A stretch of DNA of 64,000 nucleotides. It comes from Trichosphaerium sp. ATCC 40318 (Eukaryota; Protista; Tubulinea). The DNA lies in assembly GCA_038496445.1 (NCBI GenBank), contig JALMLS010000315.1, positions 1 through 64,000 of the forward strand. Direction: 5' to 3'. Under the pieces are notes generated by a model. The model made no database searches. It saw only the letters and a program-made list of their open reading frames with translations, and was not told the origin of the DNA. Shown one piece after another: positions 1,711 to 30,713 of this stretch. Both the position numbers and the translations under genes were made by a program. How positions within the stretch are numbered: position 1 is the stretch's first letter; the number at the start of each line of letters is the position of its first letter.

Positions 1711-3692
1711 TTAGAAACATTTTCTTTGTACTATATCTGGACCACTGTCTTCATACTCTTCTACGGATACCCTAAACAAGCAGTGGTTAAAATAAATAAA
1801 GTGTACAACGCAACATAATAAAGGTGGTTCGTGAAAAAAAATAAGAAAAAAATGCGAAACTCTCATCTTGACATACCACATTTTTTGAAACGTAGATAAA
1901 GAAGATAATATCATTCCTCCTACCAGAGCAAATATATTCGACTTAGGATTGTACCCTTCGGTTGTAATCTAAAACTGCATTAGCTCCAAAGAAAAAAAAA
2001 ACACAAAAACACACCATTTTACCAGCGGCTTCAACTTCTCTTTCAAGTCGTACTTTCATTCCAGGAACACCAGAAGTAGCTCCTTAAATACCTCAATTAG
2101 ATAATGCATACTACTAATTTGTAGGTAAAAGATATAACGCACCTATTACAAAGTATTTGAAATCGGCTTGATCATCTTTTGGCGGTTGCCCACTTTTTAT
2201 GATTATCTGAAATCTGGTTAATGTACTATGGATTACAGTATACTGTAATATGTACCTCTGCAAACTCTCCGTTTTTAAACAGTACATCAAAACATGCTTG
2301 GAAAGCTCCTTCAGGAACACTTATACTCTTTCCATTTGGTAGAGAAACAGTTGACTTTACACTGTTGTTAACACTTGTTTTTGATTCAGGAGACACAGAA
2401 AACTTGTTTTCAAAGAACCAAGGCTCAAGAGCGAAACGATCTTCTTCAACTATTGCCTAAGAAGTATTAAAATTCATGTAAGTTCATAACCAAAGCTTGT
2501 ACCTTATCTTCTTCATCAAGGAAAGACAGAAACTTATCAAAGATTTGATTTCCTCCAACAGGATAGACAAGCGGTTTTTCTTCCACCCTGAATAAATCCT
2601 TCCTGAGGAAGAGATATCAGCTCCTATGTCTATGATAAACCCGGTTATCTCATCTAAAGAAAAATTAAATAACCAGAAAGGTGTGTCTTGAAGCAGCAAC
2701 CCAAAACACAAAAAGTAAAAAAAGAAAAAGTGTTTGATACACTTCAGTATAAATATAAAACGTACCACAATTCATTAACGACAAACACGATGAATTACCT
2801 ACATACATTGAAAGTGCTTGGAACTCGTCAAACAGGATTTGACATATGCGAGATTTTGCTTCCGCACTGTGTTAAGAATTAGTAAAAAGAAAGAAAACGT
2901 TCAGCACTGAAACAAAAAAAATAACGTACGAAGAGTTATCAGGTAGTGATACCATTATTCCACAATCCACAGTAATAACCCCAAGCTTAATAAACCCTTG
3001 TTTTAATAGATTGATGATAGCATCCCAATCTTCTATCACACCATTCACAACTGGTCTTGACAGTTCAAGTTGTTTTATTCTTGAAAAGAATTAGACTTAA
3101 CAAAAAACAAAGAAACCAATCTAACCTGGGGATTACATCGTCTCCATAGTAAATATTGGATGTCTCAGGGTCCTTACCAACCAGGGAAGGTATTTTAACT
3201 ACTCGTGGACCTTTATCATCGTCAATACCCACTCCAAACCTTTAAAAAAAAACAAACCAGTTAGCAGCAACATTCCAATATTTCCTTTCAAAAAAAAAAA
3301 CTTTACCTCACTTGGTTTGTCCCAATATCTACTGTTACGCGGTTATCTTTTAAATCACACCTAAATTATAATGAATTAGTCTTTATAATAATAGCCTCTA
3401 AACGCTGTACCTCTTAAATACTGTCCATGGTTGATACCTCAAATAGTCAAGCGTTTGAAAGCATTGGTAGAAGTTATCACTAACTTTAACATATTCCTTG
3501 ATACTCAAACTACAATCCAATATAAACTAATAACTCTTATGCAGTTATTTCAAAAACGTACATAGATTGTCTTAATGCATGACAAGTAGCAGCACAAGAA
3601 TGAAGAGAAGTAAGCGAAGAGTACTCCCAAAAATGCTGTAAAATTTCTGGTGCCAGATCTGAAAAAGGACATTGTTCTAGTGCTAATGACAT
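1711..3692 (-). CDS. Divergent actin-related protein with N-terminal F-box-like motif (multi-exon)
   Basis: N-terminus FSDLAPEILQHFWEYSSLTSLHSCAATCHALR. Actin motifs VTVDIG, IPSLVG, PVVNGVIEDWD, TGFIIDIG and the actin C-terminus [34 protein letters not shown]. Confidence 0.85.
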
Positions 3693-3758
3693 ATCATGTG
3701 ACGGTGAAACTAACACGTGTATTAGCATAGTCTTAACATTAATGTTAAAACCTAAAGA

Positions 3759-5044
3759 CTACATTAAACAAAAATTATACTCACTGTCGGCTTCATATCT
3801 CTCAGCTGAAGAATTCTGCACACGAGTCCTTGAACAATAGGCATAAAACCACTTATCTTTTTTTGGTACTGGCTTTATGTTTTTAGGGCCGTTACGGAAT
3901 TGTAAGCTGATTCTTTGAGATGAAAATTTGTCTGGCAGATAATCTGGGTATGTATCCTTGGGTCCAATTGATGAAACACCTAAGTCAAAATTTAACAACA
4001 AAAAAAATAGATATGTCTTCTTTTGCTGTAGTACCATGTGTAATACCACAAGCAGCACTTCCATTGAACACAACAGCATCACCACTTTTTACAGTAAACG
4101 CTTTGAAGAAGTTGTTAGATAGTGCAAGGAAGAAAGGTCAGAATCCACGTGGGAGGATTTTGTATCACTTACAGATTTTCTCACAATCTGGCTCTTTGTA
4201 CCAAAACTCGGCACTGCGACCTAATGAAATAACCATAATCCATCCTCTAGACAAAAGGAAGAAAAGTCAATTATTAAAAAAGAAAACAATCAGAGACTGG
4301 CCAGTAAATTGTGTTTTACAAAAAAACCAAAAAAACATAGTCACAAGCTTGATAGTGTACGTACTGTATAAAGTCTACATGACCGCCAAGCTTACCTTCG
4401 TCGTCATAACTATAGCAAGTAGTACATATAGCGTTATAGTTTTTAGGTATAGCTCCTACAGAGGCATTAATAACGGACGGCGTTTCACTTTTTTTTTTTT
4501 GAATGAAGAGTTTTTTTTTTTGAGATATAAATAGAACCGTTTATTTGAGGCTGAACTGCTTAACGTACTTTCTTGCTGATGCGCTTCCCATGAAATAGGG
4601 CGTATAACGTCTTTAAAGGACTCTGGAATACAGTCTTGTGTAAAATCGCGTACAAATAATTTTTTGTAGTTAGAAGTCTTGTTAGACACTTTCTTCGTTT
4701 TTGGGTAGCTGCTTGCACTGTAAGTGATGCCTTTTAATAAAGTTTTAGCATCTGGTATGCGAACGCTTATTAAAGCTCATATATACAAGTAAATCGTAGC
4801 AACGTACCTTCTAGAAGCGTTTTTTGCATGTCGGGAGTAACCACGCCTTCCAACCGTACAAACTGGTATTTCTTACTCGCACTAGGTGTGTGGTGCGACT
4901 ATTACAGTAATTAGCGTTGCAAGCTACCGTAACGTACATTTCCCATGTGATGTGTTGTAAAGAAAAACTGTTGATCTCTTGAATATTTACTGGCGAAGAA
5001 ATATCAGCGGTCTTGCAAATTGGGGAAGTAGTTTGACCATTCAT
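3759..5044 (-). CDS. AlkB-like 2OG-Fe(II) dioxygenase (multi-exon; 5' end uncertain)
   Basis: Spliced frame gives CYSYDDEGKLGGHVD (HxD), VISLGRSAEF, SGDAVVFNG, THGV and RISLQFR. Confidence 0.75.
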
Positions 5045-6156
5045 CTTCCAATTGCACTCTCTATCGTGTAACTTCTCCGTGACCTGTAAAACTAGTCAAT
5101 AAACTCGCCAGCAACACCTCCGCCGCCGCTCCAAATCTCCATTCTTACAGATTTTGGTCTGGACTCTTGGTTTTTTTTTTCGTTTGGATACTGGTTGATA
5201 ATTTAAGTGCCTTTTGGATAGGATATGTGTACCCACTACTAAGCTGTCGTCAATGGAGGTTGTTGCTTAGCCGTTTAATGTTTTGGGACCTGTCATAGCC
5301 CGCCTTCAAGAACATTTCATGAATGCACAAGCAAGCACATACCAAAAAGATCTAGGTCCCTTGCGAGACAATTTTACGATGTCGCCACTCTACCACAGAC
5401 CCAATAGACCTTCCAGGCTTCAACATGGGATTTATGTAAGAACTTTGCTACTAGATCTGAATACAGAAAGCGAGTTTGCTAATTTAAAGATGTCATTTTG
5501 CGGAAAAAAGTAATTGTGGTTTTGCTTTTTGTTGTGAGACCACATAGCGTCTAGCGACTATGAAATTAAGCTTTATAGCAATATTTGGGTTCACATAGCG
5601 CTACACGTTTGTTGAACATAAAAGGGATAAAGTAAAAAAGCGGTGTTAAGCAGAGTATTGTTTAACTATTTTACAAATACAGAGTCTTTACTTTGTTGCT
5701 TGAGTCAAAGATTCTTTAACAGGAATACCTTCTGAAATGGTATCGACATTGTGCTCTAGAGCGTTTTTGTTCTTTCGGTCAAAGCTTAGTATTGTTTTGA
5801 CAGATAATGGATATACATGAAGCGTTTTACTGTGGTGTCTATAAGCGCTATTCAAGCCTCACATTCGTACTGAGAATGTACTGCAACCTTGGTACAGTAC
5901 TTGTGCATTAGCTGTGCAACTTAGCTGCATCTATAGATAAAATCTCAAGTAGTTTAACAAAAACGTCTAGTTTGTGAACTGTAGGTTAACAGTAATTTGA
6001 TAGCAACATTAAGTATTTACGTCGTGTTTTGCCTGATCAGTGAAGGATATTCGCGGTGAGTTACCGTTTTACTAGTGCTGAGAGGCACTCTAATTTGCCA
6101 TTATATTCACCCAAGACCGAGTCATTAGCCAACAACTCCATACTTCGCTGCTAAGT

Positions 6157-7236
6157 TTATTTAAAATACAAATGGAACAATTGCAATAGCATTGAAACAG
6201 CAATACTAGCTATTACACATATCTTTAATACATCCAATTTAGGCTTTCTATTTACCCTAACACGCCGTGATATCACAAGCAAAGCTTTTCGTAAAACATC
6301 ACTTTCTGCTCGTAAATCTGCAAGAAAGTTAATATCAAAAAAAGTTCAGCAGATTTCCAGTCATACTCATTACAGAGGTATCTATTCTATCAATAAATTC
6401 GTTATCCACCTTCATTTCCTTTATTTGTTGTTGTTGACGCGTGTTAAAGTCTAAAGGCAACTCAGCAATTTAGTCATGAAAAAAAAAGAAGAAAACAAAA
6501 AAAACGAATTAGGAGGAATTAAATGCCCGCTAACCACGTGAGATTGATACCTTTCTCAAATTGACGACGTATTTTTTGTTCCTTGTACATTTCACCCATT
6601 TTAACTGAGTAAAGTAAGTAGAACAAAAAATGTACTTTTCAAAAAAAAAATCACGTGCGCTGAAGCCGTATTATGTCTTCTTTTTGCACTTTTCTCTTCT
6701 CTTTCTCCAACCAAACTTGTTCTAAACGCAACATACGTCAAATTTTACGAATAGAATAACGACATTTACGGTAAATTACACGGACCTTTAAGTGCCTTGT
6801 TCTGCTTTTTCAACGCTGTGAAAAGTAATAAGAACGCGTGTCACCCAAAACAAAAAACAAAGGCAATCTTTTTTTTGCTTTTTGTTTTTGTAACGAACTT
6901 ACCTTCTATTTTATCTGCCATACGCACAGCCTCTTGCACCTGTTTAATCCCACGGGACCCATTTTCTTCTGTACCGTTTTCTCCGTAAGATACAGTGTTT
7001 CTACGCCGTCTATCACGGCTAGGACGATTTCCAGAAGTCGGTCTTTGTTGTTTTTCTTTTTTATCTTTTATGGGTACTTGTGGGTTGCTACTATGCTTTT
7101 TCCGCCTATCAGCTCGCTTTCCATTATCACCAGACCTTCTACGTGTACGTGGCTGACTCTTTGATTTATTTCTGTTAATAACATCTTCAGTATCTCCTTT
7201 TTCATCTCCTGATGGTTCTTTACTTCCCGATTTCAT
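6157..7236 (-). CDS. Tail-anchored coiled-coil protein, unknown function
   Basis: Basic low-complexity N-terminus and coiled-coil exons; last exon ends KICVIASIAVSMLLQLFHLYFK*. One intron (6605-6658) needs a GC donor. Confidence 0.6.
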
Positions 7237-7510
7237 GATAATAACTCTGTTTCTTTATTGAGAACAAATCAGATAGAAGAAAAAAACTTTTGAAAACCAT
7301 TGACCATGGCCTCTTTCAGCGCTGTTTCTTACGCGCAGCAAGTGATTTAGTTTTATATGCACTGATGTATTATATGTTATCGATACGAAATAGTAAGCTA
7401 ATCTATTCGTCAACTGAGGCTACTGATTCTATTATCTTTGGTTTTTTGCTTTTCTGGCTTTTATTATTGGTACAAGCTATTTAAGCAAACACAAATCGCG
7501 CTCTTTAATT

Positions 7511-30640: not shown

Positions 30641-30713
30641 GCTCTAATAGTACAACGGCAGTATGACAAGTTGGCGGAACTTGCAGATCCGGGTTCGATT
30701 CCCGGTTGGGGCA
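30641..30713 (+). tRNA. tRNA-like Pol III gene with atypical anticodon arm (identity unassignable)
   Basis: Acceptor stem GCTCTAA/TTGGGGC+A, D arm GTAC-AACGGCA-GTAT, T arm CCGGG-TTCGATT-CCCGG, and a T-run terminator at 30719-30723. Confidence 0.8.

What the first reader, a model, noticed from the sequence alone, without database searches (positions are those of the whole stretch)
1711..3692. F-box fused to a degenerate actin
Seen: an F-box-like N-terminus precedes a shortened, very divergent actin fold. The phosphate loops are altered (DIGTN vs DNGSG; DIGAD vs DSGDG; GATS vs GGTT), yet the C-terminal ~35 aa are near-conventional actin, down to RKCF*. Known: plant ARP8 is an F-box-actin fusion. 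Inference: an independent fusion that keeps the surface bound by profilin/cofilin-type partners and could route actin-binding proteins to SCF.
Basis: partly seen in the sequence, partly recalled or inferred. Interest (0 to 1): 0.75.

Follow-up and report, generated by a model that had tools for sequence, protein, structure and literature searches.

The report
Oxygenase–F-box–actin fusion gene in an amoeba
The F-box plus degenerate actin is real and expressed. It is only the back two thirds of a larger amoeba gene that starts with an AlkB-like oxygen-using enzyme domain, a three-part protein I found described nowhere and whose function is untested.

Summary
The altered loops DIGTN, DIGAD and GATSG are there as described.

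Spliced cDNA-type contigs from public runs join seven upstream exons to the F-box exon in one open frame. One of these contigs is 2051 nt long. My model has 19 exons (5044..1711) and 691 aa:
- **AlkB-like Fe(II)/2OG oxygenase**, with H140-x-D142, H191 and R214..R220.
- **F-box-like segment.**
- **Actin fold** of 353 aa.

The organism is Trichosphaerium sp. ATCC 40318 (Amoebozoa).

The assembly lacks 4 nt (ATAT, between 2585 and 2584) that contigs from three runs carry. As assembled, the frame breaks in the DIGAD exon. This is either a null allele or an assembly error.

The actin part scores best against conventional actins, and no ARP chain appears among the 60 best matches listed in either PDB search. 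I found no close relatives and no publication.

The scan had already noted paralogous oxygenase–F-box–actin-fold genes on other DNA of this genome. This locus adds RNA support for the junctions.

The proposed mechanism, a Skp1-docked oxygenase targeted by an actin decoy, is inferred and not shown.

The parts
4938..5044 (-). Exon U1 with the proposed start ATG (5044). It encodes a 35-aa N-terminal extension.
   Evidence: Inferred from the ORF, a GTACGT donor and frame continuity into U2. The X1 contig reaches only about 42 nt into it, and the 5' end is not resolved.
4808..4881 (-). Exon U2, start of the AlkB-like domain (FVRLEGVVTPDMQKTLLEG).
   Evidence: Covered by the X1 2051-nt contig. The X2 loose end at 4733 reads the end of this exon. 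The acceptor at 4881 was chosen by frame and by a 56-nt intron.
4569..4730 (-). Exon U3.
   Evidence: X1 record 1 (positions 117-278) and X2 record 6 lie on it.
4365..4455 (-). Exon U4, carrying H140-V-D142 (the Fe-binding HxD).
   Evidence: X3 record 11 and the X2 loose end at 4365. hhalign puts it in register with EcAlkB H131/D133.
4173..4246 (-). Exon U5 (WIMVISLGRSAEFWY, a core beta strand).
   Evidence: Record arithmetic: 230 nt lie between the anchors. Aligned to EcAlkB IVSVSLGLPAIFQF.
4035..4100 (-). Exon U6 (SGDAVVF...GITH191G, the distal Fe-binding His).
   Evidence: The joint 3977>4033 is seen in X1, X2 and X3. Aligned to EcAlkB HGDVVVW...YH187G.
3785..3979 (-). Exon U7 (R214-I-S-L-Q-F-R220, the 2OG-binding Arg pair, then a linker).
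   Evidence: Pieces of X1, X2 and X3 lie on it. Aligned to EcAlkB R204..R210. There is no stop before the donor.
3562..3709 (-). Exon F1, the F-box-like motif.
   Evidence: The X3 piece starts at 3709. X1 record arithmetic (415 nt between 3785 and 3079) fits F1+F2+A2+A3. Pfam F-box-like E=0.006. Atlas look-alikes are all F-box clusters.
3411..3509 (-). It holds the end of the F-box-like region and a linker.
   Evidence: X2 record 4 has 267 nt between the pieces at 3079 and 3562, which equals A3+A2+F2. It has GT-AG borders and keeps the frame.
3307..3360 (-). Exon A2, phosphate-1 loop VDIGTNQVR.
   Evidence: Joint 3237>3305; translation.
3126..3239 (-). Exon A3, subdomain 2 with a shortened D-loop.
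   Evidence: Joints 3079>3126 and 3237>3305.
2930..3079 (-). Exon A4 (PVVNGVIEDWD...).
   Evidence: Pfam Actin E=0.004 on the exon alone. The best PDB match is Arp2 at E=0.05, which is not significant. Pieces in X1 and X2.
2766..2866 (-). Exon A5 (Q455, the counterpart of actin Q137; MYVGNSSCLSLMNC).
   Evidence: Joints 2653>2766 and 2866>2930. Identical to P0001.
2503..2653 (-). Exon A6, phosphate-2 loop IDIGAD. The assembly lacks ATAT between 2585 and 2584, which causes a frameshift.
   Evidence: 'Put in behind 2584: ATAT' is seen in X1, X2 and X3. P0001 reads IYSGYMEEKP across the site.
2256..2456 (-). Exon A7, a trimmed and very divergent subdomain 4.
   Evidence: Joints. 100% match to P0001 residues 95-161.
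2143..2206 (-). Exon A8.
   Evidence: Joints 2081>2142 and 2206>2256.
2015..2082 (-). Exon A9 (GATSG in place of actin's GGTT).
   Evidence: A 46-nt intron is confirmed. The cDNAs read AAG (Lys) where the window gives ATG (Met641), so this is either a SNP or a cut shifted by 2 nt.
1877..1968 (-). Exon A10 ([11 protein letters not shown]).
   Evidence: Joints in X1, X2 and X4.
1711..1771 (-). Exon A11, ending ...[11 protein letters not shown] and then the stop. The 3' UTR runs to about 1670-1695.
   Evidence: Joint 1770>1876 and the X4 piece 1695-1770.

Best explanation
**Shown.** This is one expressed, 19-exon, minus-strand gene of the marine amoeba Trichosphaerium sp. It encodes about 691 aa in three modules:
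- aa ~36-256: an AlkB-like Fe(II)/2-oxoglutarate dioxygenase domain. Its metal and 2OG ligands are present (H140-x-D142, H191, R214, R220).
- aa ~257-338: an F-box-like segment (LAPEIL...).
- aa 339-691: an actin-derived fold. It keeps D11, Q137 and D154 equivalents, IYxGY and the C-terminal helix. Its phosphate loops are altered, and its D-loop and subdomain 4 are trimmed.

The window assembly carries a 4-nt gap that breaks the frame in exon A6. The cDNA contigs do not have this gap.

**Inferred mechanism.** The F-box docks the protein on Skp1, either as an SCF subunit or as a Skp1-stabilised enzyme like Dictyostelium JcdI. The non-polymerising actin-like domain acts as a bait or targeting module for proteins that recognise the barbed-end face of actin, or for actin itself. 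The oxygenase domain hydroxylates or demethylates the captured partner in an O2- and 2OG-dependent way, with or without ubiquitination afterwards.
For: **Gene structure**
- The X1 contig (2051 nt) covers 4729 down to about 1670 with introns removed. X2 and X3 contigs support the same junctions. Record arithmetic fits every exon (model).
- MMETSP0405 peptide P0001 equals model aa 437-691 except M641K.
- Window versus cDNA differences are 13 synonymous to 8 non-synonymous.

**Organism**
-.

**Actin fold**
- Pfam Actin E=3.5e-26.
- The best PDB matches are all conventional actins.

**F-box**
- Pfam F-box-like is the only hit on the exon, E=0.006.
- Atlas look-alikes are all F-box clusters.

**Oxygenase**
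- blastp against E. coli AlkB gives E=0.007, in register.
- A profile built from 80 bacterial AlkBs ranks the model above all but 3 of 2000 shuffles.
- hhalign gives E=0.0057 over 158 columns and matches all five catalytic positions.
- The motif with its spacing occurs in 8 of 200000 shuffles.

**Precedents**
- Dictyostelium JcdI is an F-box dioxygenase bound to Skp1 (PMC9485057).
- ALKBH4 demethylates actin K84me1 (PMC3674258).
Against: - The F-box score is below Pfam's cut-off, and no PDB F-box chain matched the exon.
- Exon-by-exon Pfam and PDB scans of the oxygenase region were blank. The AlkB assignment rests on weak local statistics plus motifs.
- hhalign reports a probability of only 6%.
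- The N-terminus (U1, the start codon and the U1/U2 splice) has no direct RNA support.
- Half of the actin target-binding cleft (Y143-T148) is changed, and actin K84 is not kept (it is Asn).
- No biochemical data exist.
- The assembled allele is frameshifted.
- The single-sequence AlphaFold2 model was useless (pLDDT 43).
Confidence: 0.6

Rival explanations
1. The locus as assembled is a broken copy. The 4-nt deletion in exon A6 is real in the sequenced haplotype or copy, and the intact message comes from the other allele or from a near-identical second copy.
For: Contigs from three runs carry ATAT and the window does not. The window also differs from the cDNAs at about 0.6% of exon positions, in a mosaic pattern typical of alleles. 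The site is not a homopolymer. The assembly was collapsed with Redundans (PMC10521059).
Against: The assembly is Canu long-read with Pilon polishing, so small indel errors remain possible. X2 contig 5 is identical to the window over 3785-3977, so this haplotype is transcribed. Contigs show presence, not absence, of variants.
Confidence: 0.3
2. The F-box-like stretch is only a helical linker that does not bind Skp1. The protein is then an AlkB-type enzyme with an actin-like targeting or regulatory domain and has no link to ubiquitination.
For: The Pfam score is below the gathering threshold. There is no PDB F-box match. The conserved Trp of the third helix is Leu.
Against: F-box-like is the only Pfam family hit. 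The LPxEIL-type core and the spacing of hydrophobic residues are kept. Atlas look-alikes are uniformly F-box. Paralogues noted elsewhere in this genome keep a similar segment between an oxygenase and an actin fold (unchecked notes).
Confidence: 0.25
3. One reading: a stand-alone F-box-actin protein starting at ATG 3692, acting as an SCF receptor for actin-binding proteins.
For: An in-frame Met exists at 3692. The X2 contig 4 begins at 3675. A shorter isoform from an internal promoter cannot be excluded.
Against: The exon begins at 3709 with an AG acceptor and is joined to exon U7 in contigs of X1, X2 and X3. The upstream ORF has no stop before the donor. The X2 contig start is just a contig end.
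Confidence: 0.07
4. The long cDNA contig is an assembly chimera or read-through of two neighbouring genes.
For: Contigs across two genes do not prove one transcript (caveat stated).
Against: The U7-F1 junction is a precise GT-AG splice (75-nt intron) that keeps one open frame. It is supported by independent contigs from three runs in three studies, and no stop codon or 3' end lies between the two parts.
Confidence: 0.03

Closest known systems
Paralogous oxygenase-F-box-actin-fold genes of the same genome (scan notes s1-390485 AlkB type, s1-387267 and s1-390618 ankyrin/2OG-hydroxylase type)
   Same: The same order of modules (2OG oxygenase, F-box-like, degenerate actin fold). The AlkB-type paralogue also has 19 short exons and a similar size (665 aa against 691 aa).
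   Different: They lie at other loci. No second copy lies in this window.
Arabidopsis ARP8 (F-box-containing actin-related protein; Kandasamy et al. 2008, cited in PMC8066076)
   Same: An N-terminal F-box-like motif followed by a divergent actin fold. An ESM Atlas cluster named 'putative Actin-related protein 8' is the second-nearest look-alike of the C-terminal half (a lead only).
   Different: As I recall its description, ARP8 has no oxygenase domain; I could not read the paper here. It is a plant protein reported in the nucleolus. The present fold keeps actin's own C-terminus (RKCF) and scores best against conventional actins. Common origin was not tested because no ARP8 sequence was at hand.
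Dictyostelium JcdI/Fbxo13 and animal KDM2A/KDM2B (FBXL11/10): Fe(II)/2OG dioxygenases that carry an F-box
   Same: A non-haem dioxygenase and an F-box in one polypeptide. JcdI is amoebozoan, binds Skp1 directly, and its effect needs the oxygenase activity but not the F-box (PMC9485057).
   Different: Those enzymes are JmjC-type, not AlkB-type. Their partner domains are not an actin fold (LRR/CXXC/PHD in KDM2, from my own knowledge). In JcdI the F-box is N-terminal to the enzyme domain.
ALKBH4 / C. elegans NMAD-1 (AlkB-family actin demethylases)
   Same: An AlkB-family dioxygenase functionally tied to actin, through K84me1 demethylation (PMC3674258, PMC10278977).
   Different: These are separate proteins acting on real actin. 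Whether the present domain belongs to the ALKBH4 branch could not be tested. The actin-like domain here has Asn at the K84 position.
Conventional actin
   Same: Pfam Actin E=3.5e-26. It gives the best PDB matches. D11, Q137, D154, IYxGY and 24 of the last 35 residues are kept.
   Different: The phosphate loops read DIGTN and DIGAD, and GATSG replaces GGTT. H161 is Ser. The D-loop is about 7 aa shorter and subdomain 4 about 16 aa shorter. Cleft residues 143-148 are changed. The fold is fused to two other modules.

Membership tests
Actin superfamily (Pfam PF00022) | A significant match to the Actin profile across the fold. | tested here: met
   P0001 (model aa 437-691) scores 92.2 bits, E=3.5e-26, against a cut-off of 27. 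The N-terminal exon A4 alone gives E=0.004. PDB actins match at E~1e-23.
Conventional actin | Canonical nucleotide-binding loops (DNGSG, DSGDG, GGTT) and a full-length D-loop and hydrophobic plug. | tested here: not met
   The loops read DIGTN, DIGAD and GATSG. H161 is Ser. The D-loop and subdomain 4 are shortened.
Known ARP classes with solved structures (my expectation, not checked here, is that Arp1-Arp11 are represented) | A closer match to that ARP class than to actin. | tested here: not met
   The 60 best PDB sequences listed are all conventional actins, both for the whole C-terminal 255 aa and for residues 1-180 without the conserved tail. No tree could be built because no ARP sequences were retrievable.
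Plant ARP8 | Orthology: grouping with ARP8 in an actin/ARP tree. | not tested
   Only an ESM Atlas look-alike at score 0.93. No ARP8 sequence was available by reference.
F-box (PF00646 / PF12937) | A profile match at or above the gathering score over the ~45-aa three-helix motif. | tested here: inconclusive
   16.4-16.8 bits against 24.3, E=0.006-0.008, covering profile positions 6-33 of 47 and cut by the exon end. Atlas look-alikes are all F-box at 0.86-0.88. There is no PDB match. The joined F1+F2 sequence could not be scanned.
F-box (functional) | Binds Skp1. | not testable with these tools
   Needs co-expression or pull-down, or a confident complex prediction.
AlkB family / 2OG-Fe(II) oxygenase (PF13532) | An HxD...H iron triad and an RxxxxxR 2OG-binding pair with AlkB-like spacing. 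| tested here: met
   H140, D142, H191, R214 and R220 align to EcAlkB H131, D133, H187, R204 and R210. The motif occurs in 8 of 200000 shuffles (the pattern was chosen after seeing the sequence).
AlkB family / 2OG-Fe(II) oxygenase (PF13532) | A statistically significant profile match over the domain. | tested here: inconclusive
Exon-wise Pfam was blank. Local blastp gave E=0.007. A narrow bacterial AlkB HMM ranked the model 4th of 2001. hhalign gave E=0.0057 but a probability of 6%.

The most novel reading that the evidence does not exclude
This would be a new class of Skp1/SCF-linked enzyme. A degenerate, non-polymerising actin serves as a molecular decoy that captures proteins reading the barbed-end face of actin, or actin itself. 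A fused AlkB-type dioxygenase then oxidises or demethylates the captured protein, and it may be ubiquitinated. This would couple O2 and 2-oxoglutarate levels directly to cytoskeletal turnover in an amoeba. A whole paralogous family using different oxygenase heads would work the same way.
Probability: 0.2. Interest if true: 0.8.

Novelty: new variant of a known kind. Interest (0 to 1): 0.62.

Why it matters
F-box proteins and actin-related proteins are both well known, and oxygenases with an F-box exist (KDM2, JcdI). An AlkB-like oxygenase, an F-box and an actin fold in one expressed protein is a combination I could not find described.

If it works as inferred, it would link oxygen and metabolite sensing, Skp1/SCF and the actin cytoskeleton in one molecule. 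It would also give a natural example of actin reused as a recognition module.

The locus also gives RNA evidence for the domain junctions of a gene family that the scan had so far seen only as gene models.

For annotators, the public assembly has a frame-breaking 4-nt gap here. The only database protein for this gene is a 255-aa fragment.

Tried and rejected
**Gene model**
- My first 11-exon model had a wrong end for exon A5, a wrong donor for A9 and no exon F2. The read joints corrected it.
- I first supposed a homopolymer (A5) frameshift. The real difference is a 4-nt ATAT insert 10 nt upstream.
- An acceptor at 4898 for exon U2 was rejected because it gives a 39-nt intron and a stop codon.

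**Searches for relatives and annotation**
- Exon-by-exon Pfam and PDB scans of the oxygenase region were blank.
- The representative search with exon A7 found only P0001 plus low-complexity repeat proteins.
- The look-up of encoding contigs for P0001 found nothing on record.
- The word search with P0001 found only itself.
- Metagenome and viral scans found nothing, so there is no sign of a giant-virus 'viractin' origin.
- tblastn of the model on the window found no second copy.

**Testing the AlkB assignment**
- The word search with E. coli AlkB and the genome scan returned only close bacterial AlkBs (58-98% identical). The profile built from them was too narrow, so this was a poor use of a search.

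**Structure**
- AlphaFold2 on P0001 alone gave pLDDT 43 and was not used. No fold search was run.

**Literature**
- The search for AlkB + F-box + actin-related protein found nothing relevant.
- The ARP8 paper (PMC2953251) is not held.

**Left out**
- Any scan, search or fold of the joined 691-aa model.

Full report
**What is in the sequence**

The region is AT-rich eukaryotic DNA with short GT-AG introns.
- LAPEIL... in the F-box-like exon.
- VDIGTN, IDIGAD and GATSG at the three nucleotide-binding loops.
- ...[11 protein letters not shown] at the end.

The window sequence does not give one open frame. Exon A6 needs a +1 shift between IYSG and PLVYPVGG.

**RNA evidence**

Public runs hold this stretch as intron-free contigs.
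- One X1 contig of 2051 nt runs from at least 4729 down to about 1670.
- X2 has a 1242-nt contig running from 3675 to the 3' end.
- X3 and X4 cover parts of the gene.

The joints confirm introns at 1772-1876, 2083-2142, 2207-2255, 2457-2502, 2654-2765, 2867-2929, 3080-3125, 3240-3306 and 3980-4034. They also confirm a 46-nt intron between exons A9 and A10.

Record coordinates require two things:
- A 99-nt exon (3509..3411) lies between the F-box exon and exon A2. The 267 nt between the X2 pieces at 3079 and 3562 equal A3+A2+F2.
- The F-box exon begins at 3709 and is joined to an upstream exon ending at 3785. The 415 nt between the X1 pieces at 3785 and 3079 equal F1+F2+A2+A3. An X3 piece also starts exactly at 3709.

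Contigs from all three runs that cover the site carry four extra letters (ATAT) behind 2584. This restores the frame and gives ...GRIYSGYMEEKPLVYPVGG...

**The full model**

I followed GT-AG sites, reading frame and record arithmetic upstream. This gives 19 exons (5044..1711) and 691 aa with no stop.

The first exon, the start codon and the U1/U2 splice are inferred only. The X1 contig ends about 42 nt into exon U1, and no contig covers 5020-6019.

Differences between the window and the cDNA contigs are 13 synonymous to 8 non-synonymous. That pattern is expected for a gene under purifying selection.

**Identity of the organism and database status**

A search with exon A7 against 1.84 billion representatives found one true match, P0001. 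This is a 255-aa MMETSP0405 peptide of Trichosphaerium sp. ATCC 40318, in Amoebozoa. It equals model residues 437-691 except M641K, and it includes the residues encoded across the ATAT site.

No other relative turned up in any search:
- The word search in the 140-446 aa length range.
- JGI metagenome contigs.
- IMG/VR viral contigs.
- The window itself.

The published draft genome is a Canu long-read assembly, polished with Pilon and collapsed with Redundans (PMC10521059). The 4-nt gap can therefore be either a residual error or a real allele.

**The three modules**

*1. Actin fold (aa 339-691)*
- P0001 matches Pfam Actin at E=3.5e-26.
- The 60 best PDB sequences listed are all conventional actins (E~1e-23). 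This also holds when the near-conventional tail is removed (E~6e-8).
- I therefore read the fold as actin-derived and not as a member of an ARP class with a solved structure.
- The counterparts of D11, Q137 and D154, the IYxGY motif, and 24 of the last 35 residues are kept.
- The phosphate loops, H161, the D-loop, subdomain 4 and cleft residues 143-148 are changed.
- Nucleotide binding is altered but cannot be ruled out. From my own knowledge, DIGTN resembles the DxGT loop of MreB and Hsp70.

*2. F-box-like segment (aa ~257-338)*
- Pfam F-box-like is the only family hit on the exon (E=0.006, below the cut-off, truncated by the exon end).
- The ESM Atlas look-alikes are all F-box clusters, at sub-threshold scores.
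- No PDB chain matched.

*3. AlkB-like oxygenase (aa ~36-256)*
- Exon-wise scans were blank.
- The joined domain, built only inside scripts, aligns with E. coli AlkB in register at all five catalytic positions:
  - blastp E=0.007.
  - Rank 4 of 2001 against shuffles with a bacterial AlkB profile.
  - hhalign E=0.0057 over 158 columns, but with a probability of only 6%.
  - The motif with its spacing occurs in 8 of 200000 shuffles.
- I rate this assignment at about 0.8.

**How it may work**

Only the architecture is shown. Precedents guide the inference:
- Dictyostelium JcdI is a dioxygenase with an F-box. It binds Skp1, and its effect depends on catalysis and not on the F-box (PMC9485057).
- ALKBH4 and NMAD-1 are AlkB-family enzymes that demethylate actin (PMC3674258, PMC10278977).
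- Plant ARP8 joins an F-box to an actin-related fold (reference in PMC8066076).

My best guess is an oxygenase docked on Skp1, with the actin-like domain supplying recognition of actin-binding proteins or of actin. It ignores the enzyme head, and only half of the relevant cleft is conserved.

**Relation to earlier scan notes**

The scan had already noted, on other DNA of this genome, genes with an oxygenase, an F-box and an actin fold:
- s1-390485 is AlkB-type.
- s1-387267 lies 2.5 kb beyond this window's end.
- s1-390618 has a similar architecture.

I did not test their claims on their own loci. This locus adds direct RNA support for the junctions.

**Limits**

- No actin/ARP tree could be built.
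- The AlphaFold2 model of P0001 alone was too poor to use.

Noticed in passing
window 2584-2585 (exon A6): The assembly lacks 4 nt (ATAT) that cDNA-type contigs of three runs from three studies carry. As assembled, the gene is frameshifted. The site is not a homopolymer.
   Followed up: partly
window 2014-2017 / 1969-1970: At the A9/A10 junction all contigs and P0001 read AAG (Lys) where canonical splicing of the window gives ATG (Met641). This is either a SNP at 2016 or a non-canonical cut shifted by 2 nt.
   Followed up: partly
window 6150-7270, minus strand: The upstream neighbour is a separate spliced gene, with five joints shown in the table (four CT..AC, one CT..GC) and the highest contig depth in X2. 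Its first exon encodes a Lys/Arg/Ser-rich 111-aa stretch with no Pfam match.
   Followed up: partly
window 1711-5044, intron donors: Seven of the 18 introns begin with GTACGT and 11 of 18 begin with GTAC. Introns are 46-118 nt long. This is an unusual donor consensus for this genome.
   Followed up: no
window 2552-4454 (run X3, 'organism C'): A large 2024 run holds contigs 90-99% alike over several exons, with their own substitutions and a different junction at 4098/4177. It is probably a related strain or an environmental Trichosphaerium.
   Followed up: no
window 30641-30713: The scan's index lists a first-reader note of a tRNA-like gene with an enlarged anticodon arm in this window. I did not examine it.
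   Followed up: no
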